Notes: generated by a model not told the origin, from the sequence alone. A DNA stretch of 64,000 nt from Haliotis rufescens (GCF_023055435.1 NW_025963890.1:62682001-62746000), one strand, 5' to 3'; positions 22,606 through 52,171 are shown, numbered from the stretch's first letter. Translations and numbers: made by a program.

Positions 22606-24057
22606 TCAGCACCATCCTGGGCTCCAGTTGCCTCCATAGAGATCTGGGTTTGATTTAGGGTCATCTGGTGGTTGATAAGCTGGTACTCGCGTCTTCTCCC
22701 AGTTCTCAAGGCGTTGTTTCATCATCGCTACAAGCTCAGGGTACTTAGCAGACAGGTCGAAATGTTCAGTTGGGTCGGAAGAGATATTGAACAACATATA
22801 CGGAGGGAACTGGTACACGTTTTCCTGGGGAGGGTCATCTGATCCCTCACCATAGTGTGGAAGAGGATACCAATCACTGTGAGATCCCGGTGAACCTCGC
22901 GTCAGTTTCAGGTCACCATATCTAATTGCTGAGGAGTTGGACTTGTCATAGATGTTGTAGACGAACTCTTTCCTCTTACTCGGGCCACCATTGATGAGCA
23001 TGTCGTACTGACTTATCCCGTCCATGTTGGGGTCTGTGTTCTCTCCACCAGCCAGCTCCACAAAGGTCGGGTACCAGTCTACAGCATGCATCATTCCAGT
23101 ATTGAGGTAGCCCGTCTTCTTCAGAAGGGTTTTACTGTAAATGAATCCAGCTCCTTTCGTCCCACCTTCCCATAGTGTAGCCTTAGATCCACGAAGAGGA
23201 AGGTTGTTAGCAGCACCGTGAAAAGGCCCGCCATTGTCAGTCGTAAACACCAGCAGCAAGTTGTCAATGAGTCCCGTTTCCTCTAAAGCATTCGTGATGT
23301 TAGCAACAGCTTCATCAAGAGCACTGATCATACCGCAGTAGGTCCTTCGTGGTAGGTTCTGGATATGTTTGTACAAATTCTCATACTCAGGGGGAACTTG
23401 TAGAGGTTCGTGTACTGCTTGAAACGGCAGATACAAATAAAGTGGCGTGTCCTTATCGTGAGACTTGATGATATCAACTGCTCTTTCTGCAAACACACGC
23501 GTTGAATATGTACCTTTCGCTTCCGTATATACGGAAGTGTTGAAGTGTAGATCATATCCGGAAAATTTGTCATATCCTCTTGTGTGACTGAAATAGTTCT
23601 CGGCGCCAGTGTAATACCCAACGAAAGTATCAAACCCACGGTAGGTCGGGGTGTATTTCAAGTTACAGAAGCCTAAATGCCACTTCCCAACAGCATGGGT
23701 GCTATATCCTAGTTCCTTTAACTTCTGTGGGAGGAAGGTGAACTTGATTGGAACAAATCCAGGAGAAGCTGGCTTGATGACGCCGTCCTGTAGTCCAGTG
23801 TGGTAGGGGAAGTACCCCGACATGAAGCAGTTTCTGGATGGCGAGCACAAGGGCTGGACATAGGAGGAGTTTAGGATGACTCCAGCTTTGGCCAACTTGT
23901 CCAGGTGTGGCGTCAGAACCTGTGGATTACGGAAACCAACATCGTTCCAGCCCAGATCGTCCGCAACTATGAACACAATGTGTGGCTTAGCTGCTTGACC
24001 TCCATTAAGGTAAACGAAAATGAGAGTAAAAGTCGCAACAAGCCGGGCAGCCTCCAT
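22606..24057 (-). CDS. ARSB: ARS1: arylsulfatase B/I/J-like S1 sulfatase, single coding exon, 483 aa, signal peptide
   Basis: Uninterrupted ORF with ADDLG, C-S-P-S-R (FGly motif, QPLCSPSR), GKWHLG, VHEP, TDNGG and RGSKATLWEGG. Hydrophobic leader [22 protein letters not shown]. The track start at 24066 is a GTG; the ATG at 24057 has a strong context (accATGG). The symbol is a family-level call, not proven orthology. Confidence 0.95.
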   Translation of the reverse strand: MEAARLVATFTLIFVYLNGGQAAKPHIVFIVADDLGWNDVGFRNPQVLTPHLDKLAKAGVILNSSYVQPLCSPSRNCFMSGYFPYHTGLQDGVIKPASPGFVPIKFTFLPQKLKELGYSTHAVGKWHLGFCNLKYTPTYRGFDTFVGYYTGAENYFSHTRGYDKFSGYDLHFNTSVYTEAKGTYSTRVFAERAVDIIKSHDKDTPLYLYLPFQAVHEPLQVPPEYENLYKHIQNLPRRTYCGMISALDEAVANITNALEETGLIDNLLLVFTTDNGGPFHGAANNLPLRGSKATLWEGGTKGAGFIYSKTLLKKTGYLNTGMMHAVDWYPTFVELAGGENTDPNMDGISQYDMLINGGPSKRKEFVYNIYDKSNSSAIRYGDLKLTRGSPGSHSDWYPLPHYGEGSDDPPQENVYQFPPYMLFNISSDPTEHFDLSAKYPELVAMMKQRLENWEKTRVPAYQPPDDPKSNPDLYGGNWSPGWC

Positions 24058-24112
24058 GGTTGACACTGGTGTATTGCTGATCTGGTTTTATCGACACCGA
24101 TGCATTGCGCAT

Positions 24113-24450
24113 CTAGCTTTATCTCCTCGCCTGCACATGTGATGTTACGTGACGTAAGCCGCTAAACGCGTGACAATGCTGAGCGATATTGCTCACATAC
24201 GACCCGAGTATCAGGACTACTTATCTATGAATGTGTGGTATGAAAAGTCAAGGACTCCGATAGACAGACATCTCGTCTCTGAAATAAAAATATTTTCGCA
24301 GAGAAAAGCAGTTGTTAATTTATCCCAATACAATATAATAAAAAGGAGTCTAAAGACTCTCTTGGGTAACTCCAGTAATCTAGACTTGCCAACTATTACA
24401 AACCTGCATGAGCTGTATTGGATATATTTGTTTCAGGGTCTGTATGACAG
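24113..24450 (-). promoter_or_regulatory. Conserved upstream block of the sulfatase genes (putative proximal promoter)
   Basis: Recognisably conserved upstream of all six genes and of remnant a. Contains GATAAA/AGATAA sites, CACATGTG (24134-24141), TTACGTGACGTAA (24145-24157) and AAAGTCAAGG. Function is inferred from position and conservation. Confidence 0.55.
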
Positions 24451-24658
24451 ACGTACAAATCAACTATAGTCAACTTACTCATGACCATTGGCAGCTTCCT
24501 CATCACCCTAGTCAACATGATTATGTACGGTAGGGGACACAGGTGGCCAGGTCTAGGTGTCGCCATATTTGATTATTGTCTCTAATGACCTTCTGGTGGT
24601 ATAGTTTCTCACCATGTTCTGCATGTCATTAAAAAATATCGTCAATCCATGACTTTCT

Positions 24659-24894
24659 GGGGCGGTCGGGTAGCTTAGTGGTTAAAGTGTTCGCTCGTCA
24701 CGTCGAAGACCCGGGTTCGAATCCCGACATGGGTATAATGTGTGACGCCCATTTCTGGTCTCCCCCGCCGGGATATTGCTGGAATATTGCTAAAAGCGGC
24801 TTAAAACCAAACTCACTCACCCACCCTAACACCCACCCACCCACTAACCCACTCACCCACTCACCCACTCACTCACTCACTCACTCACTCACTC
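24659..24894 (+). mobile_element. SINE family A (also at the same site in units B 30487-30652 and C 37080-37250)
   Basis: Full length; TSD tgactttctg; expanded ACCC/ACTC tail in this copy. Confidence 0.92.
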
Positions 24895-28131: not shown

Positions 28132-29583
28132 TCAGCACCATCCTGGGCTCCAGTTGCCTCCATAGAGATCTGGGTTTGATTTAGGGTCATCTGGTGGTTG
28201 ATAAGCTGGTACTCGCGTCTTCTCCCAGTTCTCAAGGCGTTGTTTCATCATCGCTACAAGCTCAGGGTACTTAGCAGACAGGTCGAAATGTTCAGTTGGG
28301 TCGGAAGAGATATTGAACAACATATATGGACGGAACTGGTACACGTTTTCCTGGGGAGGGTCATCTGATCCCTCACCATAGTGTGGAAGAGGATACCAAT
28401 CACTGTGAGATCCCGGTGAACCTCGCGTCAGTTTCAGGTCTCCATATCTAATTGCTGAGGAGTTGGACTTGTCATAGATGTTGTAGACGAACTCTTTCCT
28501 CTTACTCGGGCCACCATTGATGAGCATGTCGTACTGACTTATCCCGTCCATGTTGGGGTCTGTGTTCTCTCCACCAGCCAGCTCCACAAAGGTCGGGTAC
28601 CAGTCTACAGCATGCATCATTCCAGTGTTGAGGTAGCCCGTCTTCTTCAGAAGGGTTTTACTGTAAATGAATCCAGCTCCTTTCGTTCCACCTTCCCATA
28701 GCGTAGCCTTACATCCACGAAGAGGAAGGTTGTTAGCAGCACCGTGAAAAGGCCCGCCATTGTCAGTCGTAAACACCAGCAGCAAGTTGTCAATGAGTCC
28801 CGTTTCCTCTAAAGCATCCGTGATGTTAGCAACAGCTTCATCAAGAGCACTGATCATACCGCAGTAGGTCCTTCGTGGTAGGTCCTGGATATGTTTGTAC
28901 AAATTCTCATACTCAGGGGGAACTTCCAGAGGTGCATGTACTGCTTGAAACGGCAGATACAAATAAAGCGGCGTGTCCTTATCGTGAGACTTGATGATAT
29001 CAACTGCTCTTTCTGCAAACACGCGCGTTGAATATTTACCCTTCGCTTCTGAATATACGGAAGTATTAAAGCGTAGATCATATCCGGAAAATTTGTCATA
29101 TTCTCTTGTGTGCTTGTAATATTCCTCAGCGCCAGTGTAATACCCAACAAAAGTATCAAACCCACGGTAGGTCGGGGTGTATTTCAAGTTACAGAAGCCT
29201 AAATGCCACTTCCCAACAACATGGGTGCTATATCCTAGTTCCTTTAACTTCTGTGGGAGGAAGGTGAACTTAATGGGAACAAATCCAGGAGAGGTTGGTC
29301 TGATGACGCCGTCCTGTAGTCCAGTGTGGTAGGGGAAGTACCCCGACATGAAGCAGTTTCTGGATGGCGAGCACACGGGCTGGACATAGGAGGAGTTGAG
29401 GATGACTCCAGTTTTGGCCAACTTGTCCAGGTGTGGCGTCAGAACCTGTGGATTACGGAAACCAACATCGTTCCAGCCCAGATCATCCGCAACTATAAAC
29501 ACAATGTGTGGCTTAGCTGCTTGACCTCCATTAAGGTAAACGAAAATGAGAGTAAAAGTCGCAACAAGGAGTGCAGCCTTCAT
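28132..29583 (-). CDS. ARSB: ARS2: arylsulfatase B/I/J-like, single coding exon, 483 aa (501 aa if the in-frame ATG at 29637 is used)
   Basis: All catalytic motifs intact (QPVCSPSR, GKWHLG, VHAP, DNGG, RGCKAT), with signal peptide and C-terminal GGNWSPGWC. AATAAA on the minus strand at 28010-28015. Confidence 0.95.
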   Translation of the reverse strand: MKAALLVATFTLIFVYLNGGQAAKPHIVFIVADDLGWNDVGFRNPQVLTPHLDKLAKTGVILNSSYVQPVCSPSRNCFMSGYFPYHTGLQDGVIRPTSPGFVPIKFTFLPQKLKELGYSTHVVGKWHLGFCNLKYTPTYRGFDTFVGYYTGAEEYYKHTREYDKFSGYDLRFNTSVYSEAKGKYSTRVFAERAVDIIKSHDKDTPLYLYLPFQAVHAPLEVPPEYENLYKHIQDLPRRTYCGMISALDEAVANITDALEETGLIDNLLLVFTTDNGGPFHGAANNLPLRGCKATLWEGGTKGAGFIYSKTLLKKTGYLNTGMMHAVDWYPTFVELAGGENTDPNMDGISQYDMLINGGPSKRKEFVYNIYDKSNSSAIRYGDLKLTRGSPGSHSDWYPLPHYGEGSDDPPQENVYQFRPYMLFNISSDPTEHFDLSAKYPELVAMMKQRLENWEKTRVPAYQPPDDPKSNPDLYGGNWSPGWC

Positions 29584-29637
29584 GGTTGACACTGGTGTAT
29601 TGCTGATCTGGTCTTTTGAAACTGGTGCATTGCGCAT

Positions 29638-33358: not shown

Positions 33359-33560
33359 TCAGCACCATCCTGGGCTCCAGTTGCCTCCATAGAGATCTGG
33401 GTTTGATTTAGGGTCATCTGGTGGTTGATAAGCTGGTACTCGCGTCTTCTCCCAGTTCTCAAGGCGTTGTTTCATCATCGCTACAAGCTCGGGGTACTTA
33501 GCAGACAGGTCGAAATGTTCAGTTGGGTCGGAAGTGATATTGTACAACATATATGGAGGA
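33359..33560 (-). pseudogene. 3'-only arylsulfatase remnant (last ~66 codons, PPYMLYNIT...SPGWC*)
   Basis: Near-identical to the 3' end of the intact copies and keeps the 3' flank. At 33560 it joins non-coding DNA homologous to 49791 onward. No catalytic domain. Confidence 0.9.
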
Positions 33561-34717: not shown

Positions 34718-36169
34718 TCAGCACCACCCTGGGCTCCAGTTGCCTCCATAGAGAGCTGGGTTTGATTTAGGATCCATTGGTGGTTGATAAGCTGGTACTC
34801 GCGTCTTCTCCCAGTTCTCAAGGCGTTCTTTCATCATCGCTACAAGCTCGGGGTACTTAGCAGACAGGTCGAAATGTTCAGTTGGGTCGGAAGTGATATT
34901 GTACAACATATATGGAGGAAACTTGTCCTTCTTTTCCTGGAAAAGGACATCTGAACGCTCACCAGACTGTGGAAGAGGATTCCAATCATTGTGAGATCCC
35001 GGTGAACCTCGCATCAGTTTCAGGTCTCCATATCTAATTGCTGCAGATTTGGACTTGTCATAGATATTGTAGACGAACTCTTTCCTCTTACTCGGGCCAC
35101 CATTGATGAGCATGTCGTACTGACTGACTCCGTCCATGTTGGGGTCTGTGTTCTCTCCACCAGCCAGCTCCACAAAGGTCGGGTACCAGTCTACAGCATG
35201 CATCATTCCAGTGTTGAGGTAGCCCGTCTTCTTCAGAAGGGTTTTACTGTAGATGAATCCAGCTCCTTTCGTCCCACCTTCCCATAATGTCGCTTTAGCT
35301 CCACGAAGAGGAAGGTTGTTAGAAGCATGCCAATAAGGCCCACCATTGTCAGTCGTAAACACCAGCAGCAAGTTGTCAATGAGTCCCGTTTCCTCTAAAG
35401 CATTCGTGATGTTAGCAACAGCTTCATCAAGAGCACTGATCATACCGCAGTAGGTTCTTCGTTCTTCATTCTGGATATGCTTGTACAAATTCTCATACTC
35501 AGGGGGAACTTGTAGAGGTTCATGTACTGCTTGAAACGGCAGATACAAATAAAGTGGCGTGTCCTTATCGTGAGACTTGATGATATCAACTGCCCTTTCT
35601 GCAAACACGCGCGTTGAATATTTACCCTTTGGTTCCGTATATGCAGAAGTGTTAAAGCGTAGATCATATCCAGAATAATTGTCAAATGTTTTTGTGTGCT
35701 TGTAATAGTCCTCACCACCCATGTAATACCCAACATAGGTATCAAACCCACGGTAGACAGGGGTGTATTTCAAGTTGCAGAAGCCTAAATGCCACTTCCC
35801 AACAGCATGGGTGCTATATCCTAGTCCCTTTAACTTCTGTGGGAGGAAGGTGAACTTGATTGGAACAAATCCAGGAGAAGTTGGACTGATGACGCCGTCC
35901 TGTAGTCCAGTGTGGTAGGGGAAGTACCCCGACATGAAGCAGTTTCTGGATGGCGAGCACACGGGCTGGACATAGGAGGAGTTGAGGATGACTCCAGTTT
36001 TGGCCAACTTGTCCAGGTGTGGCGTCTGAACCTGTGGATTACGGAAACCAACATCGTTCCAGCCCAGATCGTCCGCAACTATAAACACAATGTGTGGCTT
36101 AGCTGCTTGACTTCCATTAAGGTAAACGAAAATAAGAGCAAAAGTCGCAACAAGCCGTGCAGCCCCCAT
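34718..36169 (-). CDS. ARSB: ARS3: arylsulfatase B/I/J-like, single coding exon, 483 aa (501 aa from the in-frame ATG at 36223)
   Basis: Intact ORF with QPVCSPSR, GKWHLG, VHEP, DNGGPYWH and RGAKAT; signal peptide. Confidence 0.95.
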   Translation of the reverse strand: MGAARLVATFALIFVYLNGSQAAKPHIVFIVADDLGWNDVGFRNPQVQTPHLDKLAKTGVILNSSYVQPVCSPSRNCFMSGYFPYHTGLQDGVISPTSPGFVPIKFTFLPQKLKGLGYSTHAVGKWHLGFCNLKYTPVYRGFDTYVGYYMGGEDYYKHTKTFDNYSGYDLRFNTSAYTEPKGKYSTRVFAERAVDIIKSHDKDTPLYLYLPFQAVHEPLQVPPEYENLYKHIQNEERRTYCGMISALDEAVANITNALEETGLIDNLLLVFTTDNGGPYWHASNNLPLRGAKATLWEGGTKGAGFIYSKTLLKKTGYLNTGMMHAVDWYPTFVELAGGENTDPNMDGVSQYDMLINGGPSKRKEFVYNIYDKSKSAAIRYGDLKLMRGSPGSHNDWNPLPQSGERSDVLFQEKKDKFPPYMLYNITSDPTEHFDLSAKYPELVAMMKERLENWEKTRVPAYQPPMDPKSNPALYGGNWSPGWC

Positions 36170-40341: not shown

Positions 40342-41793
40342 TCAGCACCACCCTGGGCTCCAGTTGCCTCCATAAAGATCTGGATTTGATTTAGGATCCA
40401 TTGGTGGTTGATAAGCTGGTACTCGCGTCTTCTCCCAGTTCTCAAGGCGTTGTTTCATCATCGCTACAAGCTCAGGGTACTTAGCAGATAGGTCGAAATG
40501 TTCAGTTGGGTCGGAAGTGATATTGTACAACATATATGGAGGGAACTTGTCCTTCTTTTCCTGGAGGAGGACATCTGAACCCTCACCTGACTGTGGAAGA
40601 GGATTCCAGTCATTGTGAGATCCCGGTGAACCTCGCATCAGTTTCAGGTCACCATATCTAATTGCTGCAGATTTGGACTTGTAATTGATGTTGTAGACGA
40701 ACTCTTTCCTCTTACTCGGGCCACCATTGATGAGCATGTCGTACTGACTGACTCCGTCCATGTTGGGGTCTGTGTTCTCTCCACCAGCCAGCTCCACAAA
40801 GGTCGGGTACCAGTCTACAGCATGCATCATTCCAGTGTTAAGGTAGCCCGTCTTCTTCAGAAGGGTTTTACTGTAGATGAATCCAGTTCCTTTCGTCCCA
40901 CCTTCCCATAGTGTATCCTTAGCTCCACGTAGAGGAAGGTTGTTAGAAGCAGTGTAATAAGGCCCGCCATTGTCAGTCGTAAACACCAGCAGCAAGTTGT
41001 CAATGAGTCCCGTTTCCTCTAAAGCATTTGTGATGTTAGCAACAGCTTCATCAAGAGCACTGATCATACCGCAGTAGGTCCTTCGTGGTAGGTTCTGGAT
41101 ATGTTTGTACAAATTCTCATACTCAGAGGGAACTTCCAGAGGTGCATGTACTGCTTGAAACGGCAGATACAAATAAAGTGGCGTGTCCTTATCGTGAGAC
41201 TTGATTATATCAACTGCTCTTTCTGCAAACACGCGCGTTGAATATTTACCCTTTGGTTCCGTATATACAGAAGTGTTAAAGCGTAGATCATATCCAGAAT
41301 AATTGTCAAATGTTTTTGTGTGCTTGTAATAGTCCTCATCACCCATGTAATACCCAACATAGGTATCAAACCCACGGTAGACAGGGGTATATTTCAAGTT
41401 GCAGAAGCCTAAATGCCATTTCCCAACAGCATGGGTGCTATATCCTAGTTCCTTTAACTTCTGTGGGAGGAAGGTGAACTTGATTGGAACAAATCCAGGA
41501 GAAGTTGGACTGATGACGCCGTCCTGTAGTCCAGTGTGGTAGGGGAAGTACCCCGACATGAAGCAGTTTCTGGATGGCGAGCACACGGGCTGGACATAGG
41601 AGGAGTTGAGGATGACTCCAGCTTTGGCCAACTTGTCCAGGTGTGGCGTCAGAACCTGTGGATTACGGAAACCAACATCGTTCCAGCCCAGATCGTCCGC
41701 AACTATAAACACAATGTGTGGCTTAGCTGCTTGACTTCCACTATGGTAAACTAATATGAGAGCAAAAGTCGCAACAAGCCGTGCAGCCTCCAT
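40342..41793 (-). CDS. ARSB: ARS4: arylsulfatase B/I/J-like, single coding exon, 483 aa (501 aa from the in-frame ATG at 41847)
   Basis: Intact ORF with QPVCSPSR, GKWHLG, VHAP, DNGGPYYT and RGAKDT; signal peptide. Confidence 0.95.
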   Translation of the reverse strand: MEAARLVATFALILVYHSGSQAAKPHIVFIVADDLGWNDVGFRNPQVLTPHLDKLAKAGVILNSSYVQPVCSPSRNCFMSGYFPYHTGLQDGVISPTSPGFVPIKFTFLPQKLKELGYSTHAVGKWHLGFCNLKYTPVYRGFDTYVGYYMGDEDYYKHTKTFDNYSGYDLRFNTSVYTEPKGKYSTRVFAERAVDIIKSHDKDTPLYLYLPFQAVHAPLEVPSEYENLYKHIQNLPRRTYCGMISALDEAVANITNALEETGLIDNLLLVFTTDNGGPYYTASNNLPLRGAKDTLWEGGTKGTGFIYSKTLLKKTGYLNTGMMHAVDWYPTFVELAGGENTDPNMDGVSQYDMLINGGPSKRKEFVYNINYKSKSAAIRYGDLKLMRGSPGSHNDWNPLPQSGEGSDVLLQEKKDKFPPYMLYNITSDPTEHFDLSAKYPELVAMMKQRLENWEKTRVPAYQPPMDPKSNPDLYGGNWSPGWC

Positions 41794-42187
41794 GTTGCAG
41801 ACTCGTATACTGCTGATCTGGTCTATTGAGACTGGTGCATTGCGCATCTAGCTTTATCGGCACCTCTGCACATGTGATATTACGTGGACATTAGCTGTTA
41901 TACATGTGACAATACACAGCGATATTGCTCATATCCGACCCGAGGATCGGGGTTACTTATATCTAGGTATGTGTTTGACAAGNNNNNNNNNNNNNNNNNN
42001 NNNNNNNNNNNNNNNNNNNNNNNNNNNNNNNNNNNNNNNNNNNNNNNNNNNNNNNNNNNNNNNNNNNNNNNNNNNNNNNNNNNNNNNNNNNNNNNNNNNN
42101 NNNNNNNNNNNNNNNNNNNNNNNNNNNNNNNNNNNNNNNNNNNNNNNNNNNNNNNNNNNNNNNNNNNNNNNNNNNNNNNNNNNNNNN

Positions 42188-42525
42188 TAAGTCGTTGGCA
42201 ACATGAGCATATGCCTATATAAGTCGTTCTCAACATGGCATATGGCTATATAATTCGTTGTCAACATCAGCATATGGCTATATAAGTCGTTGTCAACATG
42301 GCATATGCCTATATAATTCGTTGTCAATATGACCATATGCCTACATGTCGTTGTCAACATAACCATATGCCTATACAATTCGTTGTCAACATGACATATG
42401 CCTATATAATTCGTTGTCAACATGGGCATATGCCTATATAAGCCGTTGTCAACATGAGCATATGCCTATATAAGCCGTTATCAAGAACATGGGAATATGC
42501 CTGTATAAATCGTTGTCAACATGGG
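42188..42525 (+). repeat. 31-32-bp minisatellite (>=10 copies, runs into the gap); ~2.5 copies also at 52417-52498
   Basis: Unit gtcgttgtcaacatggcatatgcctatataa. Confidence 0.93.
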
Positions 42526-42714
42526 CAACTTGTCCAGGTGTGGCGTCAGTACCTGTGGATTACGGAAACCAACATCGTTCCAACCTAGATCATCCGCAGG
42601 TATGAACACAATGTGTGGCTCAGCTTCTTGACTTCCATAAAGAAAAACGAAAATTATAGCAATAGTCGCAACAAGCCGTGCTGCCTCCGTGGTTGCCACT
42701 GGTGCATTCCGCAT
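42526..42714 (-). pseudogene. 5'-only arylsulfatase remnant a (leader to ...PHLDKL), fused to a minisatellite
   Basis: Translates as [54 protein letters not shown]. The main ATG is mutated to ACG, and homology stops before the CSPSR motif. It keeps the upstream conserved block (42715-43030). Confidence 0.9.
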
Positions 42715-45029
42715 CTAGATTTATCGCCTCGTCTGCACATATGATGCTACGTGGACATCAGCTGCTTACGCGTGACAAGACTCAGCGATATTGCCCGTAT
42801 TCGACCCGGGTGTCGGGACAATTTACCTTTGTAAGTCTTATACGAAAACTCAAGGTCTCTGATAGATAAACATCTAGTCTCTGAAATGAAAATATGTTAC
42901 AGAAAAAAAGCATTTGTTAATTTATCTTTATGTGATATTATAAAAAGGAGCCTAGCTACTTTCTTTGAAAACTACAGTAACAATACTTGCGAAGTATTAG
43001 ATATACTTCTTTCAGGGTCTGTATGACACTAAGTCACTGGATACATATCAAATGTGTAAGTCGTTAGAACTCGATAGAGGGTCCTGATAAACGGATTGTA
43101 TCAGTTGAAATATTACTTCTCCAACTATTTATGTGGTATACATCATCAGGTATATGTGGTCGTTACAATAGTATACGATACTTGAGTATATGCTATTAAG
43201 CATCTATTTAGCATTGTATAATTTTTAACCATGTTCTGCATGTCATGTAAAAACATCGTCATGAATTGACTTTCCTTCTTCAACCGTTGCAATGATATGA
43301 CATAGAAAGTCAACAAGTTTTAATGGCGCCACTTTCCTCAAAAAGGTTGTATTGCTAAGGTGCCCTCCAGTCAGATTGTTTCACAGACATTCTGAGATGT
43401 TCGCATTCGGACCCACTCAGATTACTCGTTATCTACATAATAACTCGTGCAAAGGTGATTTTATTGCATAATTTAGCTGCAAGTTTCGTTCAAACCGACC
43501 ACCCCGCATATAGTTCAATGGTTGATTTTGATAAAAGATATGTTTCTATTGTTAATACAAAATAGGGATCCTATTTGATATAGAACAACTGCCGGCATGT
43601 TGTGTTGTGTAATGTGGTAGTAACGAGAACTAGTAAAACCTGTGCATACAGTTCCAATATGAATACCGACTGCTGGCCGAGATGCTCTATAGGATTGAGG
43701 TGTGCCGGGTGGAATGCTCGATGTAATACGATTTTTTTGTTTGTTTGTTGTTTAACGCCGCACTCAGCAATGTTACAGCTATATGACGGCGGTCTGTAAA
43801 TAATCGAGTCTGGACTAAACAATCCAGTAATTGACACCATGAGCATCGATCTAAACAATTGGGATACGATGACATGCATCAACAAAATAAGCGAGCCTGA
43901 CCACCCGATCCTGTTAGTCGCCTTTTAAGACAAGCATAGTCGCCTTTGTCGGCAATCATGGGTTGCTGGAGACCTATTCTACCCCGGATCTTAACGGGTC
44001 CGATGTTATAAGAAGGATGAAAATGAGTGCTAATAGTTTTACACCACTTTAAGAAGGGTCTTCACATATTGTATCTAAATATATACCAGCCTGGACTTCG
44101 TAATGACGAGCGAAGGAATTAAGTACAAGGCAACCAAACCGCCGGCAGATATCGAAGTAGGCCAAGATAAAAAGACCTACATTATCGGCACATCAAGGTT
44201 AAAATTTAGGTTTTATGTTGTCGTCGTATACATATAGATATTGATAAGACGATTAAGGACACTAAAGTGTGTATTGTGGTTGTACCACTTTAATTGTAAA
44301 GTGTTATTATTGTTACGCAAGAATTGCTTTACAATAAATCATGTAGTTTAACAATCCGCATCTATACATTATTTCAACAATAAATCTACTCCATCCCGGA
44401 TGCAAAGATTAACCCCGACATAAATAAGCTCTCGTCTTCATAGGTCGCTACTCACATGAATGCAACAGATATGAGTAAATATGTTCGCTAATGCTGATGG
44501 TTGATGGTACTATATCCGTCTTCGCTACATCGAAAATTGATGATATACAAACGTTATCAAAACGTCACTAGGCTGACAGCAGTAGCCGAAACACTGCAGT
44601 CTTGAGGTCCATAAACACAGCTATGACACTCGTATCAAATATCTCACCATCGAATAACTATTTCTTGTTTGTTTCAATTTTAGCCACCATCAAACATCGG
44701 TTTCCAATTTCCTTTGCCCGCAGATTACATCATCATGACATTAACGTATAAATGAAGAAATTTCAACTGATTTATTCTTTCAATGCGACCTTTAGGTACA
44801 AGTGATAGTAAGGTGCAAACCTCTGTCTCAAAACGCAATATAAAAAAAGTTGAAATCGATAAAGCAGCCATGTCTTCATTAATACTACGGGTTGTCATTA
44901 AAACAACCGTACACTGACTGGTAATTATAACATAACAAAAAATGGGATCAAAGTATCAATCACGCATTTTGTCATTGATTGTCACTGATATTAACTGTAG
45001 CGTTCCTGGTAGCCAACAGAATACAACAT
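42715..45029. repeat. Older, more diverged spacer unit D (empty sites for the SINEs of units A-C)
   Basis: Same backbone order as units A-C but uninterrupted at ttgactttcc (~43265) and cgttatctacataa (~43427). Confidence 0.75.
43731..44001 (-). mobile_element. Family C, full length, with a duplicated hairpin module
   Basis: Reverse complement reads gacccgttaagatccggggtagaataggtctccagcaacccatg...ggcgactatgcttgtcttaaaaggcgactaacagg...ggcgttaaacaacaaac. Confidence 0.88.
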
Positions 45030-46481
45030 TCAGCACCACCCTGGGCTCCAGTTGCCTCCATAGAGATCTGGGTTTGATTTAGGGTCATCTGGTGGTTGAT
45101 AAGCTGGTACTCGCGTCTTCTCCCAGTTCTCAAGGCGTTGTTTCATCATCGCTACAAGCTCAGGGTACTTAGCCGAGAGGTCGAAATGTTCCGTTGGGTC
45201 GGAGGTGATATTGTACAACATATATGGAGGGAACTTGTCCTTCTTTTCCTGGAGAGGGACATCTGAAGTCTCATCAGCATGAGGAAGAGGATTCCAGTCA
45301 TTGTGAGATCCCGGTGAACCTCGCATCAGTTTCAGGTCACCATATCTAATTGCTGAGGAGTTGGACTTGTCATAGATGTTGTAGACGAACTCTTTCCTCT
45401 TACTCGGTCCACCATTGATGAGCATGTCGTACTGACTTATCCCGTCCATGTTGGGGTCTGTGTTCTCTCCACCAGCCAGCTCCACAAAGGTCGGGTACCA
45501 GTCTACAGCATGCATCATTCCAGTGTTGAGGTAGCCCGTCTTCTTCAGAAGGGTTTTACTGTAGATGAAACCAGTTCCTTTCGTCCCACCTTCCCATAGT
45601 GTCGCTTTAGCTCCACGTAGAGGAAGGTTGTTAGAAGCAGTGTAATAAGGCCCGCCATTGTCAGTCGTAAACACCAGCAGCAAGTTGTCAATGAGTCCCG
45701 TTTCCTCTAAAGCATTCGTAATGTTAGCAACAGCTTCATCAAGAGCACTGATCATACCGCAGTAGGTCCTTCGTGGTAGGTTCTGGATATGCTTGTACAA
45801 ATTCTCATACTCAGGAGGAACTTCCAGAGGTGCATGAACTGCTTGAAACGGTAGATACAAATAAAGCGGCGTGTCTTTATCGTGAGACTTGATTATATCA
45901 ACTGCTCTTTCTGCAAACACACGCGTTGAATATTTACCTTTCGCTTCTGAATATACGGAAGTGTTAAAGTGTAGATCATATCCGGAAAATTTGCCATATT
46001 CTCTTGTGTGCTTGTAATATTCCTCGGCGCCAGTGTAATACCCAACAAAAGTATCAAACCCACGGTAGGTCGGGGTGTATTTCAAGTTGCAGAAGCCTAA
46101 ATGCCACTTCCCAACAGCATGGGTGCTATATCCTATTTCCTTTAACTTCTGAGGGAGGAAGGTGAACTTAATGGGAACAAATCCAGGAGAAGTTGGCCTG
46201 ATGACTCCGTCCTGTAGTCCAGTGTGGTAGGGGAAGTACCCCGACATGAAGCAGTTTCTGGAAGGCGAACACACGGGCTGGACATATGAGGAGTTGAGGA
46301 TGACTCCAGCTTTGGCCAACTTGTCCAGGTGTGGCGTCAGAACCTGTGCATTTCGGAAACCAACATCGTTCCAGCCCAGATCATCCGCAACTATGAACAC
46401 AATGTGTGGCTTAGCTGCTTGACTTTCATTAAGGTAAACGAAAATGAGAATAAGAGTCGCAACAAGCCGTGCAGCCTCCAT
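45030..46481 (-). CDS. ARSB: ARS5: arylsulfatase B/I/J-like, single coding exon, 483 aa
   Basis: Intact ORF with all catalytic motifs and a signal peptide. The upstream ATG is absent in this copy. Confidence 0.95.
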   Translation of the reverse strand: MEAARLVATLILIFVYLNESQAAKPHIVFIVADDLGWNDVGFRNAQVLTPHLDKLAKAGVILNSSYVQPVCSPSRNCFMSGYFPYHTGLQDGVIRPTSPGFVPIKFTFLPQKLKEIGYSTHAVGKWHLGFCNLKYTPTYRGFDTFVGYYTGAEEYYKHTREYGKFSGYDLHFNTSVYSEAKGKYSTRVFAERAVDIIKSHDKDTPLYLYLPFQAVHAPLEVPPEYENLYKHIQNLPRRTYCGMISALDEAVANITNALEETGLIDNLLLVFTTDNGGPYYTASNNLPLRGAKATLWEGGTKGTGFIYSKTLLKKTGYLNTGMMHAVDWYPTFVELAGGENTDPNMDGISQYDMLINGGPSKRKEFVYNIYDKSNSSAIRYGDLKLMRGSPGSHNDWNPLPHADETSDVPLQEKKDKFPPYMLYNITSDPTEHFDLSAKYPELVAMMKQRLENWEKTRVPAYQPPDDPKSNPDLYGGNWSPGWC

Positions 46482-47229
46482 GTTTGGTGTATATGCTGAT
46501 ATGGATTTATCGAGACTGATGTATTGCGGGGTCAGCTTTATCGCCTTGTCTGCGCATGTGATGTTAGTTGGACATTAGCCACTATATGTGTGATAATACA
46601 CTTCGATATCGCTCACAACTGACCCGAGGTTCGGGGTTACATATCTATGCATGTGTGGTATGAAAAGTCAAGGTCTCTTGTAGACTAACTAGTCACTGAA
46701 ATAAAAATACCTCAGAGGGAAAAGATAGTTGTTAATTTATCTTAATACAATATAATAAAAAGGAGCCTAGAGACCTTCTTTGGAAACTGCAGTAATTAAG
46801 ACGTGCCAAGTATTACAGACTAGCATTGACTGTATTGGATGTATTTGATGGCGCCTCATTTCGATGTGCATCCCTTAGACGTGACAGTGTTCATGGGTTC
46901 CGATCATGCTCTGCCCTGATAGAGTTTCTTGATTTGTTAGCACCATAAAGCTCGTGGGTTTCATCGAATTGGTAAAACTCCAAAACCTGCATCACGTTGT
47001 GCTGTCCTACCACATAATGCCATTTCTCCGTGGTTCACTCTGAGGCGCCCTATTTCGATGTGCAAAATTACGCCCTTTGTGACTGGTTTCATGGGTTCGA
47101 ATCCCGGTGCAACCTGATTATGCTTCACGAGCTTGTCAGCACCGGACCCGTACTCGTGGGTTTCATCAAAGGGGTAAACGTCCCACACTTGCATCACTTT
47201 GTACTTTCCACCAACACCATACTAACGAC

Positions 47230-48785: not shown

Positions 48786-48954
48786 TGAGTGAGTGAGTGA
48801 GTATGGTTTTACGCCGCTTTTAGCAATATTCCAGCAATATCACGGCGGGGGACACCAGAAATGGGCTTCACACATTGTACCCATGTCGGGAATCGAACCC
48901 GGGTTTTCAGCGTGACGAGCGAACGCTTTAACCACTAGGCTACCCGACCGTCCC
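48786..48954 (-). mobile_element. SINE family A, near-consensus (young)
   Basis: Perfect 12-bp TSD acaaaaagtaag; intact A and B boxes. Confidence 0.95.
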
Positions 48955-49965
48955 ACAAAAAGTAAGACATATGCTCACTTGAAAGAGTCAAATAAACCTT
49001 ACTTGTTGTAGAATCATTTTACACAGTTTGTTGTTGTTTAGAATGTTCAGACCGATAGGAGTTTTGGTTTTCTTTTCGTAGTCATGGGAGCTAGTGACTT
49101 TGAGGTTGATGACGGAACACTATCGACACGTGTTTGAAATTTGTTTCAACAATGCCAAGTCATTTTGAATTCATTCTTGTACTATTATACATGAATCAAA
49201 ATGTTTATTTATCGCCAAAATTAATTGGTTCGGGACTTACAACTTTAATTTCATTCGGGACAGATAACCATTCAGTCCTCGTCACTCGTAAAGTGTTGTC
49301 TATAAACGACTCTTAGTCAGAAGTTGTTTGATCAAGGTTACAACATTCAAGGCCTCACTAAAGTTTGCAAAAAGTGTTTAATGTGGACATGTGGAAGACA
49401 TTTCCAGATTTGACGCATCAGTAACAAAACTGATTTTTCAGGTTGAACATCTGCCTTGCCTTTGCATGTGTTTGTGGCGGGTGCCATCGGTGGGGCAGGC
49501 TACACCTGGTATCATCATTATGTCGTAGCGATTCATAAACACATGCTCATGATATAGTCGGAATCGTACAATCGACTCTGCTTTAGGCAGATCTTTGTTA
49601 TGAATATGGAAAGAGTTTGGTCGTTTATAATTACATATAGATATAGATAACACGATAAAGGACACGGAATTGTATTTACGTTACTTGTAAAGCTTTCTTC
49701 TTTATATAGATTGCTATTCAACAAATCAGGTAGTAGGGCGCCGTGCATTAACATGCACGTGCAAATTGTGAATCACGACTTTAAAGTCGAGGAAATGTCT
49801 CTATGAATATGTATTAAAAGATGCATAGTTTTATTTCAGAATATATTTATTTAGATGTACTTCTATATGAAGTACAGTTACTTTTTTCCGTTAGTACAGA
49901 TAGCATGGAAAAGGACACAAAGTAGTGTGTTGTTGTTGCACCACTTTACTTGAAAAGATATATTA

Positions 49966-50140
49966 GAGTAAAGTACGGTTATAACGAACCCAAAGGGACT
50001 ACTAATTTTAGTTCGTTATAACCGTAGTTCGTTATAAGCATATATACAGCATAACTACAGCAAATAGTCGGGACCAAAAAGTAAGTTCGCTATATCCGTC
50101 AGTTCGTTATAAGCGTGTTCGTTATAACCGTAGTTTACTG
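49966..50140. mobile_element. 175-bp MITE (Tc1/mariner-pogo type)
   Basis: ~24-bp TIRs (gagtaaagtacggttataacgaac / gttcgttataaccgtagtttactg), TA duplication and internal gttcgttata repeats; empty site at ~33730. Confidence 0.9.
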
Positions 50141-50719
50141 TATTCTTTAGTTGAATTTCGATACAAAAAATCAAGTAGTTTAACAATACGGATCCATAAA
50201 TATTATTCAACAATTGATATAAAAGTATGAATAAATCTACTCCACCCCTGATGCAAAGAATAACTCCGACATTACTATGAAAATAAAGAAAAATCAGCTC
50301 TCGTTTTTATAGGTGGCTACTCACATGACTGCATCCGACATCAGCAATGCTGTTCGTTAATACTGATGGTATATAGTTACCGATACAATATCCGTCCTCG
50401 CTATGTCGAAACTTGATCGTATAAAGAAGACCAAGACATTAACGTATGAATGAAGACTTATGGGCGTCAATCTACATATACTTCCAATGCGACTTTTAGG
50501 TCCAGGTGCTTGTAAGGTACGAATTGTCAAAATGAAAGAATAAACAAGTTGAAATCGATACGGCAGACATGGCTTCATTGATACTATGGCTTGCCACTAA
50601 AAGATAAATAAACAAGTAATTACAACATAACAATCGATGGGATGAGGTTCAAGAGCATCAATCACTTTCTTTTCGCCGATTGTCAATGAAATTAGGTTTT
50701 TGTTCGCCAAACAAAATAT

Positions 50720-52171
50720 TCAGCACCACCCTGGGCTCCAGTTGCCTCCATAGAGATCTGGGTTTGATTTAGGGTCAGCTGGTGGTTGATAAGCTGGTAC
50801 TCGCGTCTTCTCCCAGTTCTCAAGGCGTTGTTTCATCATCGCTACAAGCTCGGGGTGCTTAGCAGAGAGGTCGAAATGTTCAGTTGGGTCGGAAGTGATA
50901 TTGTACAACATATATGGAGGAAACTTGTCCTTCTTTTCCTGGGGAGGGTCATCTGGTCCCTCGCCAGACTGTGGAAGAGGATTCCAATCATTGTGAGATC
51001 CCGGTGAACCTCGCATCAGTTTCAGGTCACCATATCTAATTGCTGAGGAGTTGGACTTGTCATAGATGTTGTAGACGAACTCTTTTCTCTTACTCGGGCC
51101 ACCATTGATGAGCATGTCGTACTGACTTATCCCGTCCATGTTGGGGTCTGTGTTCTCTCCACCAGCCAGCTCCACAAAGGTCGGGTACCAGTCTACAGCA
51201 TGCATCATTCCAGTGTTGAGGTAGCCCGTCTTCTTCAGAAGGGTTTTACTGTAGATGAAAGCAGTTCCTTTCGTCCCACCTTCCCATAGTGTCGCTTTAG
51301 CTCCACGTAGAGGAAGGTTGTTTGCAGAACGCCAATAAGGCCCGCCATTGTCAGTCGTAAACACCAGCAGCAAGTTGTCAATGAGTCCCGTTTCCTCTAA
51401 AGCATTTGTGATGTTAGCAACAGCTTCATCAAGAGCACTGATCATACCGCAATAGGTCCTTCGTTCCATGCTCTTGATATGCTTGTACAAATTCTCATAC
51501 TCAGGGGGAACTTCCAGAGGTTCGTGTACTGCTTGAAACGGCAGATACAAATAAAGTGGCGTGTCCGTATCGTGAGATTTAATTATATCAACTGCTCTTT
51601 CTGCAAACACGCGCGTTGAATATTTACCCTCCGGTTCCGTATATACGGTAGTGTTAAAGCGTAGATCATATCCAAAATATTTATCAAATTTTCTTGTGTG
51701 CTTGAAATAGTCTTCACCACCAATGTAAAATCCAACGAAGGTGTCAAACCCACGGTAGGTCGGGGTGTATTTCAAGTTGCAGAAGCCTAAATGCCACTTC
51801 CCAACAGCATGGGTGCTATATCCTAGTTCCTTTAACTTCTGAGGGAGGAAGGTGAACTTAATGGGAACAAATGCAGGAGAGGTTGCTCTGATGACGCCGT
51901 CCTGTAGTCCAGTGTGGTAGGGGAAGTACCCCGACATGAAGCAGTTTCTGGATGGCGAGCACACGGGCTGCACATAGGAGGAGTTTAGGATGACTCCAGC
52001 TTTGGCCAACTTGTCCAGGTGTGGCGTCAGAACCTGTGGATTACGGAAACCAACATCGTTCCAGCCCAGATCATCCGCAACTATGAACACAATGTGTGGC
52101 TTAGCTGCTTGACTTCCATTAAGGGAAACGAAAATAAGAGCAAAAGTCGCAACAAGGCGTGCAGCCTTCAT
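50720..52171 (-). CDS. ARSB: ARS6: arylsulfatase B/I/J-like, single coding exon, 483 aa
   Basis: Intact ORF with QPVCSPSR, GKWHLG, VHEP, DNGGPYWR and RGAKAT. The track start at 52180 is a GTG; the ATG is at 52171. Confidence 0.95.
   Translation of the reverse strand: MKAARLVATFALIFVSLNGSQAAKPHIVFIVADDLGWNDVGFRNPQVLTPHLDKLAKAGVILNSSYVQPVCSPSRNCFMSGYFPYHTGLQDGVIRATSPAFVPIKFTFLPQKLKELGYSTHAVGKWHLGFCNLKYTPTYRGFDTFVGFYIGGEDYFKHTRKFDKYFGYDLRFNTTVYTEPEGKYSTRVFAERAVDIIKSHDTDTPLYLYLPFQAVHEPLEVPPEYENLYKHIKSMERRTYCGMISALDEAVANITNALEETGLIDNLLLVFTTDNGGPYWRSANNLPLRGAKATLWEGGTKGTAFIYSKTLLKKTGYLNTGMMHAVDWYPTFVELAGGENTDPNMDGISQYDMLINGGPSKRKEFVYNIYDKSNSSAIRYGDLKLMRGSPGSHNDWNPLPQSGEGPDDPPQEKKDKFPPYMLYNITSDPTEHFDLSAKHPELVAMMKQRLENWEKTRVPAYQPPADPKSNPDLYGGNWSPGWC

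What the first reader, a model, noticed from the sequence alone, without database searches (positions are those of the whole stretch)
22606..52171. Six-copy sulfatase array whose differences cluster in loops next to the catalytic residues
Seen: the six 483-aa proteins are nearly invariant, but substitutions pile up in short blocks. These are GVI-[KPA/RPT/SPT/SPT/RPT/RAT]; G-[YYTGAENYFSHTRGY/YYTGAEEYYKHTREY/YYMGGEDYYKHTKTF/YYMGDEDYYKHTKTF/YYTGAEEYYKHTREY/FYIGGEDYFKHTRKF]; VH-[E/A]-PL-[Q/E]; DNGGP-[FHGAA/FHGAA/YWHAS/YYTAS/YYTAS/YWRSA]; and RG-[S/C/A]-K-[A/D]-T. Established: the invariant neighbours correspond to human ARSB C91, R95, K145/H147, H242, D300/N301 and K318, so several variable blocks sit directly beside active-site residues. 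The swaps involve aromatic and charged residues of the kind that bind sugars. Inference: this is a repertoire of secreted or lysosomal sulfatases tuned to different sulfated substrates (e.g. algal carrageenan, fucoidan, ulvan or phenolic sulfates if the host is a grazer), i.e. a host-encoded desulfation toolkit.
Basis: partly seen in the sequence, partly recalled or inferred. Interest (0 to 1): 0.75.

Follow-up and report, generated by a model that had tools for sequence, protein, structure and literature searches.

The report
Abalone tandem sulfatase genes, diversifying loops
Six neighbouring, intact genes in an abalone genome encode near-identical sulfate-removing enzymes that differ mainly in a few loops beside the catalytic residues, which suggests, but does not prove, a host-made enzyme set for digesting sulfated seaweed compounds.

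Summary
Six intact single-exon 483-aa ORFs lie on the minus strand. All the quoted variable blocks are exact. The N gap is intergenic, next to a minisatellite.

The proteins are ARSB-like formylglycine sulfatases with every catalytic residue invariant. The host is an abalone, Haliotis. The six are the youngest clade of a 24-gene supercluster; 37 intact copies were found genome-wide. An earlier first-reader note of this scan (s1-805581) described the neighbouring part of the array.

The coding regions evolve in concert:
- Recombination signal is present.
- Flanks are far more diverged than synonymous sites.
- The scaffold clusters by species, while loop types are shared with H. rubra.

Most variable sites fit dN/dS near 1. 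A few codons show dN/dS above 1, with 280/281 recurring in three paralog clades.

Contigs of four guessed-RNA runs cover only the gene body.

Substrate tuning, a dietary role and 3-D closeness to the pocket remain inferred.

Verdict: a real and interesting new member of a known kind.

The parts
22606..24057 (-). S1, intact single-exon ARSB-like sulfatase CDS (483 codons plus stop); loop 279-283 = FHGAA at 23209-23223
28132..29583 (-). S2, intact sulfatase CDS; loop 279-283 = FHGAA at 28735-28749. An upstream in-frame ATG at -54 gives the 501-aa ORF.
34718..36169 (-). S3, intact sulfatase CDS; loop 279-283 = YWHAS at 35321-35335
40342..41793 (-). S4, intact sulfatase CDS; loop 279-283 = YYTAS at 40945-40959
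45030..46481 (-). S5, intact sulfatase CDS; FGly motif CSPSR at 46257-46271; loop 279-283 = YYTAS at 45633-45647
50720..52171 (-). S6, intact sulfatase CDS; loop 279-283 = YWRSA at 51323-51337
44363..46512 (-). Span of S5 covered by colinear contigs of four guessed-RNA runs: the CDS, about 0.67 kb of 3' flank and 24-31 nt of 5' leader, with no internal joint. Depth is about 0 just outside, at 44191-44387 and 46555-46948.
   Evidence: tables 2 and 8
46536..46542 (-). TATA-like GATAAAG at -61 of S5. The same heptamer lies at -65 or -66 in the other five genes (24117-24123, 29642-29648, 36228-36234, 41852-41858, 52231-52237).
   Evidence: Promoter function is inferred from the spacing to the contig 5' ends.
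33362..33559 (-). Orphan 3' gene fragment: last 66 codons plus stop, 100% identical in protein to S5. It lies in the long S2-S3 spacer.
42526..42687 (-). Orphan 5' gene fragment (leader to ...LDKL, 81% to S5), cut off where the minisatellite begins
52479..52649 (-). Second orphan 5' gene fragment, cut at the same point (after LDKL) next to 2.6 copies of the same 32-bp repeat
41983..42187 (.). Assembly gap (N), intergenic between S4 and S5. Not filled and not looked up.
42188..42527 (.). 32-bp minisatellite, 10.7 copies, abutting the gap

Best explanation
Shown here. The region is a tandem array of six intact, intronless, transcribed genes in an abalone. Each encodes a secretory-pathway, formylglycine-dependent sulfatase of the ARSB type (SulfAtlas S1_2). 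The array is the youngest clade at one end of a roughly 261-kb supercluster of 24 such genes. The catalytic machinery is invariant: Cys71 (to become formylglycine), R75, K125/H127, H216, metal ligands D33/D34/D274/N275, and K292. The coding regions are kept alike by gene conversion. About 80 codons in six or seven loop blocks stay divergent, are older at synonymous sites, and carry loop types shared with another abalone species. A few loop codons are under positive selection: 280/281, which lie five or six residues after the metal ligands, in three paralog clades; also 95, 152, 217, 235 and 392.

Inferred. The loops shape the leaving-group side of the pocket, so the paralogs are isozymes with different preferences for sulfated substrates. 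The likely substrates are dietary ones met in the gut or digestive gland: fucoidan, carrageenan or agar-type galactans, ulvan, or sulfated phenolics and steroids.
For: Genes and family:
- ORFs.
- Pfam Sulfatase, E 1.3e-55.
- Human ARSB 1fsu, E 2.3e-117.
- AlphaFold model pLDDT 94.1; Foldseek 1fsu TM 0.90, followed by S1_19 carrageenan 4-sulfatases at TM 0.78-0.79.
- Exon-sized FGE matches over the Pfam cut-off on two contigs.

Context:
- Best named relatives are Haliotis. The window's own proteins share a 90% cluster with a RefSeq Haliotis rufescens protein.
- 37 intact copies genome-wide, 22 of them (plus 2 with a TGA) in C112:62.47-62.73 Mb.

Gene conversion:
- PHI-type test, 0 of 2000 permutations as low as observed.
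- 260 parsimony steps on the best single tree against a minimum of 210.
- Flank K2P means 0.21-0.43 against CDS dS 0.08-0.18.
- pS in loops is 1.9 times that of the scaffold; 9 of 459 circular shifts reach it.
- On 381 scaffold columns the species clades get 99/99 support and a cross-species clade is rejected (p-AU 0.006). On 79 loop columns cross-species groups appear (89/91, 87/94) and 0 of 200 bootstrap trees give species monophyly.
- 25 trans-specific shared polymorphisms against 6 fixed differences.

Selection (M1a vs M2a, 2dlnL):
- The six genes: 17.15 on a single tree and 10.76, p 0.0046, with five segment trees.
- Clade B, 15 genes: 71.5, and 36.7, p 1e-8, with six segment trees.
- Clade C, 12 genes: 18.5, p 9.5e-5.
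- Null simulation: 0 of 25 replicates above 5.99, maximum 4.16.
- Site 281 has posterior above 0.96 in all three clades.
- Variable sites coincide between clades, odds ratios 4.3-5.3.

Expression.

Literature context (passages read):
- Abalone entrails are a commercial sulfatase source (PMC2684592).
- Scallop has 7 ARSB genes, 4 of them seen in the hepatopancreas proteome (PMC5159873).
- The dominant abalone gut bacteria carry few sulfatases (PMC5870069).
- S1 sulfatase specificity lies in recognition of the leaving group (PMC9096561).
Against: - Only about 1% of codons in the six genes fall in the class with dN/dS above 1, and about 28% fit dN/dS = 1.
- Loop-wide dN/dS is 0.81 for loops defined after the fact, and 1.07 for sites defined independently from clades B and C. 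Most of the variation is therefore equally explained by relaxed constraint.
- The posteriors are naive empirical Bayes from 6 to 15 sequences and come from my own code.
- Recombination was handled only by coarse partitions in clades A and B, and not at all in clade C.
- For the loop columns the AU test does not reject species monophyly at 0.05 (p 0.072), and the groups were named after seeing the data.
- Divergence islands can resist conversion without any selection.
- No 3-D distance to the pocket was computed.
- The runs are only guessed to be RNA, are contigs rather than reads, and their tissue is unknown.
- No substrate data exist for any of these proteins.
Confidence: 0.6

Rival explanations
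1. Neutral mosaic. The paralogs are functionally redundant copies, kept for dosage. Gene conversion homogenises the scaffold. Surface loops under relaxed constraint drift and, once diverged, escape conversion simply because conversion needs near-identity. No substrate differentiation is involved.
For: - About 28% of codons fit dN/dS = 1.
- Loop-wide dN/dS is 0.81-1.07.
- The 401-416 block is a low-confidence loop, with pLDDT block means of 53-77.
- The same loops vary in all clades, as expected for unconstrained positions.
- The loop-tree AU test gives p 0.072.
Against: - The likelihood-ratio tests reject a model without dN/dS above 1 in three separate clades, and the same two codons (280/281) recur. 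The null simulation stayed below 4.2.
- Block 279-283 has pN/pS 3.4.
- A five-residue loop motif, FHGAA, is identical in two species, while six scaffold sites are fixed differently between them.
Confidence: 0.22
2. Endogenous role. The enzymes turn over the animal's own sulfated glycans (mucus, extracellular or shell matrix, lysosomal glycosaminoglycans). Diversification tracks endogenous substrates, not diet.
For: - The closest characterised relative, human ARSB, is a lysosomal GalNAc-4-sulfatase for glycosaminoglycans.
- The tissue of the runs is unknown.
Against: - 37 intact copies are far more than glycosaminoglycan turnover needs in other animals; scallop has 7 ARSB genes (passage of PMC5159873).
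- Exon-sized sulfatase matches elsewhere in the genome suggest that conventional multi-exon sulfatase genes also exist.
- Abalone viscera are an unusually rich sulfatase source (PMC2684592).
Confidence: 0.12
3. Arms race with dietary inhibitors. Changes at the pocket rim are selected to escape algal compounds that bind and inhibit digestive enzymes, rather than to change substrate.
For: Recurrent positive selection at the same few rim-adjacent codons in three clades. This fits an arms race as well as it fits substrate tuning. The inhibitor idea itself is my own suggestion and comes from no call.
Against: No inhibitor of these enzymes is known from any call here. Loop types persist across species, which fits stable functional classes better than a running arms race.
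Confidence: 0.05
4. Assembly artefact: the copies are mis-assembled alleles or collapsed and expanded repeats.
For: A gap lies inside the array. The long S5-like contigs of two runs carry other paralogs' letters at several S5-unique sites.
Against: - The copies differ by 3-7% in the CDS and far more in the flanks, with different flank relationships.
- Exact S5-specific contigs occur in two runs of another study.
- H. rubra has five full-length annotated proteins of this clade plus one low-quality fragment.
Confidence: 0.01

Closest known systems
Human arylsulfatase B / N-acetylgalactosamine-4-sulfatase (PDB 1fsu; SulfAtlas S1_2)
   Same: Best sequence and fold match: E 2.3e-117 and TM 0.90 at 42% identity. 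All active-site residues are conserved. Two-domain S1 fold, with an N-terminal leader.
   Different: The human gene is a single-copy, eight-exon lysosomal gene (abstract of PMC4683826 in the listing). Here the genes have a single coding exon, sit in tandem arrays of dozens, and have diverged loops. The substrate is unknown.
Bacterial S1_19 carrageenan 4-O-sulfatases (ZgCgsA 9hh3, PsS1_19A 6bia/6b0j, PsS1_19B 6psm)
   Same: Next-best structural neighbours, TM 0.78-0.79, E 1e-55 to 1e-62. They act on galactose-4-sulfate of a red-algal polymer, chemically close to the ARSB reaction. In PsS1_19B, F103 of the -1 subsite lies 26 residues after the catalytic Cys (PMC6923384). The same offset falls in variable block 95-97 here; this mapping is an inference by offset.
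   Different: 27-32% identity. They are bacterial and sit in polysaccharide utilisation loci. No residue-level alignment to PsS1_19B was available here.
Mollusc digestive-gland arylsulfatases (scallop ARSB genes; commercial 'abalone entrails' sulfatase)
   Same: Scallop has seven ARSB genes, four of them detected in the hepatopancreas proteome, with pockets said to vary in size and charge (passage of PMC5159873). Abalone entrails are a sulfatase preparation used on steroid sulfates (PMC2684592).
   Different: No link between those activities and these particular genes was tested. The copy number here is about five times that of scallop.
Multigene families that combine concerted evolution with diversifying selection on binding loops (general concept, recalled, not from a call)
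   Same: The scaffold is homogenised within a species, while binding-loop types are old, shared across species and show dN/dS above 1.
   Different: Here the family is a hydrolytic enzyme with an invariant catalytic core, not a receptor or a toxin.

Membership tests
S1 formylglycine-dependent sulfatases (Pfam PF00884) | Match to the family profile above its curated cut-off | tested here: met
   189.3 bits against a cut-off of 25, E 1.3e-55, residues 25-337 of S5
S1 formylglycine-dependent sulfatases (Pfam PF00884) | C-x-P-x-R motif for formylglycine formation | tested here: met
   CSPSR at codons 71-75 in 6 of 6 copies
S1 formylglycine-dependent sulfatases (Pfam PF00884) | Metal ligands and catalytic Lys/His residues (ARSB D53, D54, R95, K145, H147, H242, D300, N301, K318) | tested here: met
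   D33, D34, R75, K125, H127, H216, D274, N275 and K292 align to them and are invariant in 6 of 6 copies. The residue list is from a passage of PMC5159873.
S1 formylglycine-dependent sulfatases (Pfam PF00884) | A formylglycine-generating enzyme in the same genome | tested here: met
   PF03781 exon-sized matches over the cut-off on contigs C35 and C390. The gene models were not assembled.
S1 formylglycine-dependent sulfatases (Pfam PF00884) | Sulfate-ester hydrolysis | not testable with these tools
   Needs an enzyme assay
SulfAtlas subfamily S1_2 (ARSB/ARSI/ARSJ type) | Closest characterised relative is an S1_2 member | tested here: met
   1fsu is the top hit by sequence and by fold. ARSB is listed as S1_2 in PMC5066984. 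Named relatives are annotated arylsulfatase B/I/J-like. No SulfAtlas classifier was run.
SulfAtlas subfamily S1_2 (ARSB/ARSI/ARSJ type) | GalNAc-4-sulfate specificity | not testable with these tools
   No substrate data
Tandem multigene family under concerted evolution | Recombination or conversion signal among the paralogs | tested here: met
   PHI-type statistic 0.328 against a permutation mean of 0.401, 0 of 2000 as low. 50 extra parsimony steps on the best single tree.
Tandem multigene family under concerted evolution | Coding regions more alike than their flanks, and paralogs more alike within a species than between species | tested here: met
   Flank K2P means 0.21-0.43 against dS 0.08-0.18. 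Scaffold identity is 95.5-98.7% within the species against 91.6-94.2% to H. rubra, and species clades get 99/99 support. The species comparison is at protein level only, because no H. rubra DNA was available.
Diversifying selection on specificity loops | Codons with dN/dS above 1, replicated | tested here: met
   M1a vs M2a p 0.0046 (six genes, partitioned), 1e-8 (clade B, partitioned), 9.5e-5 (clade C, single tree). Site 281 appears in all three. Null simulation: 0 of 25 false positives.
Diversifying selection on specificity loops | Selected sites line the substrate pocket | tested here: inconclusive
   217 is next to the catalytic H216, and 291/293 flank K292. The other sites lie in coil after strands that carry catalytic residues. 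No coordinates were available, so no distances were computed.
Processed retrogene origin | No introns in the coding region, while related genes have introns | tested here: inconclusive
   The ORFs are uninterrupted, and contigs of 1006-1064 nt are colinear with the DNA. Other sulfatase matches in the genome are exon-sized pieces. A parent gene, poly(A) remnants and target-site duplications were not sought.

The most novel reading that the evidence does not exclude
Abalone carry a host-encoded battery of more than 35 sulfatase genes that does the job bacterial polysaccharide-utilisation sulfatases do elsewhere. Within it, gene conversion keeps one scaffold, while selection preserves a small set of old, trans-specific active-site loop 'cassettes'. 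The hot spot is the two residues at 280/281. Each cassette would set a different specificity for algal sulfated glycans. If so, the animal itself, not its microbiota, does much of the desulfation. These genes would also give the first sequences for the long-known but unsequenced mollusc fucoidan and galactan sulfatases.
Probability: 0.3. Interest if true: 0.75.

Novelty: new member of a known kind. Interest (0 to 1): 0.55.

Why it matters
Sulfate esters block the breakdown of fucoidan, carrageenan, agar-type galactans and ulvan, and almost all sequenced algal-polysaccharide sulfatases are bacterial (review PMC9096561).

Sulfatase activity in abalone and other mollusc viscera has been used for decades (PMC2684592). 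It was reported on fucoidan in 1967; I saw that paper only as a reference in PMC6315715. A 2018 paper still states that the sequences and specificities of fucoidan sulfatases are unknown (PMC6315715). The dominant gut bacteria of an abalone carry few sulfatases (PMC5870069).

This array, and the 37-gene family around it, gives concrete candidates and names specific residues for specificity swaps: 280/281, 95, 152 and 217. It is also a clean case of gene conversion and positive selection acting on different parts of one enzyme gene.

Tried and rejected
3-D mapping. I wanted distances from the variable and selected sites to formylglycine 71, but no tool returns coordinates. Structure prediction gave only pLDDT and secondary structure, and Foldseek gave only whole-chain scores. 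Literature routes gave little:
- The ARSG/ARSB docking paper lists no pocket residues in the passages read.
- No paper on ZgCgsA structures is held.
- The Hettle 2018 Structure paper and the GALNS structure paper are not held.
- PMC6923384 gave only F103, Y455 and Y458 for PsS1_19B. Its supplementary notes and figures, which I could not open, may list more contacts.
- The search of solved structures prints only the top alignments, so PsS1_19B itself could not be aligned residue by residue.

Codon models. M7/M8/M8a were run only on the single tree. The partitioned run hit the time limit after M2a, so there is no partitioned M8. Clade C was not partitioned. Branch lengths in the partitioned clade-B fits were fixed from M0 up to one scale factor.

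Loop tree. Species monophyly is not rejected at 0.05 (p-AU 0.072). The loop set was defined from variation in this species, after seeing it.

Other window ORFs. Pfam on six of them gave nothing above the cut-offs.

Literature on novelty. Searches found no paper on an abalone or gastropod sulfatase gene expansion, or on intronless ARSB arrays. That is absence in this library only.

Rejected readings:
- Bacterial origin or contamination: all best hits are molluscan and other metazoan ARSB-like proteins.
- Pseudogene array: 6 of 6 ORFs are intact, dN/dS is 0.23-0.49, and contigs are present.

Full report
WHAT IS THERE. Six complete ORFs of 483 codons lie on the minus strand, head to tail, 4.7-6.6 kb apart. 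I call them S1 to S6:
- S1 22606-24057
- S2 28132-29583
- S3 34718-36169
- S4 40342-41793
- S5 45030-46481
- S6 50720-52171

The window has 40.8% G+C and four N runs. tblastn with S5 also finds three orphan gene pieces. One is a 3' end at 33362-33559. The other two are 5' ends at 42526-42687 and 52479-52649, both cut after the same residues (LDKL). 88 of 483 codons differ in amino acid and 69 more differ only synonymously. Nucleotide identity is 92.7-96.8% and protein identity 88.8-95.9%.

THE GAP. The N run at 41983-42187 begins 190 nt upstream of the S4 start codon. It abuts a 32-bp minisatellite of 10.7 copies at 42188-42527. No sulfatase CDS touches it. The 158-aa 'ORF' across it is a run of X. 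Continuity across the gap is unknown, so the S4-S5 distance and the copy number at that point are estimates. I did not fill it.

WHAT THE PROTEINS ARE.
- S5 matches Pfam Sulfatase (E 1.3e-55) and human N-acetylgalactosamine-4-sulfatase, ARSB, 1fsu (E 2.3e-117).
- An AlphaFold model built on 96 sequences has mean pLDDT 94.1 and pTM 0.92.
- Its best structural match is 1fsu (TM 0.90, 42% identity). Bacterial S1_19 carrageenan 4-sulfatases follow at TM 0.78-0.79.
- By the residue-level alignment, ARSB D53/D54, C91, R95, K145/H147, H242, D300/N301 and K318 correspond to D33/D34, C71, R75, K125/H127, H216, D274/N275 and K292. All are invariant in the six copies. The ARSB list is from a passage of PMC5159873.
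- ARSB is SulfAtlas subfamily S1_2 (passage of PMC5066984).
- Residues 2-19 form a hydrophobic helix ahead of the mature start. I read this as a signal peptide; no dedicated predictor was available.
- Exon-sized matches to the formylglycine-generating enzyme family lie on two other contigs.

ORGANISM AND WIDER LOCUS. The best named relatives are Haliotis rubra 'arylsulfatase B/J-like' proteins at 88% identity, then other Haliotis, limpets, periwinkles and bivalves. The window's own proteins are unnamed members of a 90%-identity cluster that also holds a RefSeq Haliotis rufescens 'arylsulfatase J-like' protein. The host is therefore an abalone, a seaweed grazer, and the genes already have automatic annotation.

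A six-frame search of the window's genome (1.33 Gb) gave 90 matches. 37 of them are full-length ORFs without stops. Of these, 22 plus 2 copies with one TGA lie at C112:62.47-62.73 Mb, all but one on the same strand. The six genes are at the distal end of that stretch. Further arrays lie on four other contigs, plus one distant single copy on a fifth. In a protein tree the six form a 100/100 clade on a long stem, beside a 15-gene clade (B) from the same supercluster. A 12-gene clade (C) comes from other contigs. An earlier first-reader note of this scan (s1-805581) had described the neighbouring part as an array of intronless ARSB-like sulfatases. My search agrees. Other sulfatase-like matches in the genome are exon-sized pieces, so the single-exon state is special to this family. 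A retrogene origin is plausible but was not tested further.

IS THE CLUSTERING REAL? Among mature residues there are 41 gaps of 2 or fewer between successive variable sites. The permutation mean is 23.9 and the maximum of 10,000 permutations is 36. Variable sites are enriched in coil: 53 of 78 variable sites against 190 of 382 invariant ones, odds ratio 2.1, p 0.004. The blocks fall in coil segments that follow strands or precede helices carrying catalytic residues: 88-108, 149-158, 213-222, 230-234, 274-296 and 388-419. The same positions vary in the independent clades. Overlap of variable sites gives odds ratio 5.3 (p 1e-11) for A against B and 4.7 (p 6e-10) for A against C.

CONCERTED EVOLUTION. 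Four lines agree.
1. 99 informative sites show many incompatible splits. A PHI-type statistic is lower than in all 2000 permutations. The best single tree needs 260 steps against a minimum of 210, and five segments with their own trees still need 236.
2. The flanks are much more diverged than synonymous sites. Mean K2P is 0.21-0.43 in the 190-600 nt on either side, against dS of 0.08-0.18, and the nearest neighbours in the flanks differ from those in the CDS.
3. Synonymous divergence is uneven. pS is 0.21 in the loop blocks and 0.11 in the scaffold, a ratio of 1.9 that only 9 of 459 circular shifts of the mask reach.
4. Comparison with five full-length H. rubra proteins of the same clade:
   - Six scaffold sites are fixed differently between all six and all five, while 25 sites, mostly in the loops, carry the same two or more residues in both species.
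   - On 381 scaffold columns the species form clades at 99/99, and a cross-species 'type I' clade is rejected (p-AU 0.006).
   - On 79 loop columns, S1/S2 group with three H. rubra proteins (89/91) and S6 with another (87/94). 0 of 200 bootstrap trees give species monophyly, but the AU test against monophyly gives only p 0.072.
   - The five-residue motif FHGAA is identical in S1, S2 and three H. rubra proteins.

My reading is that conversion homogenises the scaffold while the loop types are older than the species split. The loop set was defined after seeing the variation, and the species comparison is at protein level only.

SELECTION. Gene-wide pairwise dN/dS is 0.23-0.49. I wrote a Goldman-Yang-type codon likelihood with site classes.
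- Six genes, best single tree. M1a against M2a gives 2dlnL 17.15 (p 1.9e-4), M7/M8 17.99 and M8a/M8 17.1.
- Six genes, five segment-specific trees. M1a/M2a gives 10.76 (p 0.0046). 71% of codons have omega 0.07, 28% have omega 1 and 1.1% have omega 9.5. Posteriors above 0.9 are at 235 and 281, with 280, 465 and 405 at 0.56-0.68.
- Null check. A simulation under M1a gave 0 of 25 replicates above 5.99, with a maximum of 4.16.
- Clade B. 2dlnL is 71.5 on one tree and 36.7 (p 1e-8) with six segment trees. Posteriors are above 0.9 at 95, 152, 217, 281 and 392. On the single tree, 7 of 8 sites above 0.8 do.
- Clade C. 2dlnL is 18.5 (p 9.5e-5), with sites 92, 280 and 281 (single tree only).
- Codon 281, six residues after the metal ligand N275, is thus picked in all three clades, and codon 280 in two.

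Against a broad claim: sites defined independently (variable in both B and C, 69 codons) have dN/dS 1.07 in the six genes. Sites invariant in B and C have 0.10. Only blocks 279-283 (pN/pS 3.4) and 233-236 (1.5) clearly exceed 1. Most of the loop variation is therefore as well explained by relaxed constraint.

EXPRESSION. Eight runs of two studies, guessed to be RNA, hold 54-65% of the sampled words of a stretch that is 69% CDS. Contigs of four of them (X1, X2, X5, X8) were laid on 43600-49500.
- They cover 44363-46512. That is the CDS, about 0.67 kb of 3' flank and 24-31 nt upstream of the ATG.
- Depth is near zero in the adjoining bins 44191-44387 and 46555-46948.
- Single contigs of 1064 and 1006 nt are colinear with the DNA (tables 2 and 8).
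- Two runs hold contigs identical to S5 over 169 and 175 (or 142) nt, intervals where every other paralog differs by at least 2 and at least 5 nt. Letters unique to S6, and letters shared by S1/S2/S3, are also read.
- A TATA-like GATAAAG lies at -61 to -66 in 6 of 6 genes, about 30-37 nt upstream of the contig ends.

I read this as unspliced mRNAs of roughly 2.1 kb from at least three array members. Limits: the runs are only guessed to be RNA, contigs give no expression levels, and the tissue is unknown.

WHERE THE SITES SIT IN 3-D was not measured, because no tool gave coordinates. What can be said:
- 217 is the residue after catalytic H216, and 291/293 flank K292.
- In PsS1_19B the -1 subsite residue F103 lies 26 residues after the catalytic Cys (PMC6923384). 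The same offset from C71 is residue 97. Alignments to two other S1_19 enzymes show no indel in that stretch. This mapping is an inference.
- A review states that S1 specificity lies in leaving-group recognition, and that C-terminal-domain residues also contribute (PMC9096561). That makes the C-terminal variable block and site 392 worth a look.
- From memory only, S5 residue 152 (ARSB S172) may match the active-site Ser150 of ARSA. This is a lead, not a test.

VERDICT. The array is a new member of a known kind: a lineage-specific expansion of ARSB-type sulfatases in a mollusc, already auto-annotated. It shows clear interplay of gene conversion and recurrent positive selection at a two-codon hot spot beside the metal ligands. 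That the loops tune substrate choice, and that the substrates are dietary, is the most likely reading (about 0.6) but is inferred. Literature passages make it plausible:
- Abalone viscera are a classical sulfatase source (PMC2684592).
- Four of seven scallop ARSB proteins are found in the hepatopancreas (PMC5159873).
- The dominant abalone gut bacteria carry few sulfatases (PMC5870069).

Four library searches found no report of this expansion.

Noticed in passing
window 33362-33559; 42526-42687; 52479-52649 (minus strand): Three orphan sulfatase gene pieces. One is a 3' end identical in protein to S5. The other two are 5' ends cut at the same residue (after LDKL), each followed by the 32-bp repeat. 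This suggests that a truncated 5' piece plus minisatellite was duplicated together with some units.
   Followed up: partly
window 48774-48959, with copies at about 2620-2780, 13394-13555, 14335-14506, 24654-24824, 30482-30667, 34493-34653 and 37075-37250: A short interspersed element of roughly 170-185 bp, 80-92% alike between copies, occurs once in most array units. In the guessed-RNA runs the bins 48722-49115 and 43600-43993 have summed word depths of 5e4 to 7e5, far above the genes. It is therefore very abundant in those libraries.
   Followed up: no
window 29584-29637, 36170-36223, 41794-41847: S2, S3 and S4 have an in-frame ATG 54 nt upstream, giving 501-aa ORFs; a 501-aa RefSeq model exists. 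This ATG lies between the TATA-like box (-65) and the transcript start inferred for S5 (-24 to -31). The 483-aa product with the hydrophobic leader is therefore more likely.
   Followed up: partly
window 45442-46512: The long S5-like contigs of runs X5 and X8 (8-9 differences per 1000 nt) carry the letter of the other paralogs at several S5-unique sites, e.g. 46136, 46206, 46269, 46349 and 46353. This could be an allele, an assembly chimera of paralog transcripts, or a copy missing from the assembly near the gap.
   Followed up: partly
window 1660-2763 (+): A 367-aa ORF with no Pfam match at E 0.01. Five other ORFs of 124-182 aa in the flanks also had nothing above the cut-offs.
   Followed up: partly
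G000:C112:62472912-62734171: The six genes end a supercluster of about 261 kb holding 22 intact copies and 2 stop-containing copies, plus several fragments. All but one (L024, plus strand) are on the same strand. Copies L007 and L008 are almost identical in protein.
   Followed up: partly
window 21144-21211: Another first-reader note (s1-812817) proposes a pseudoknot-like RNA motif at the 5' end of a retroposon, just downstream of S1. I did not examine it.
   Followed up: no
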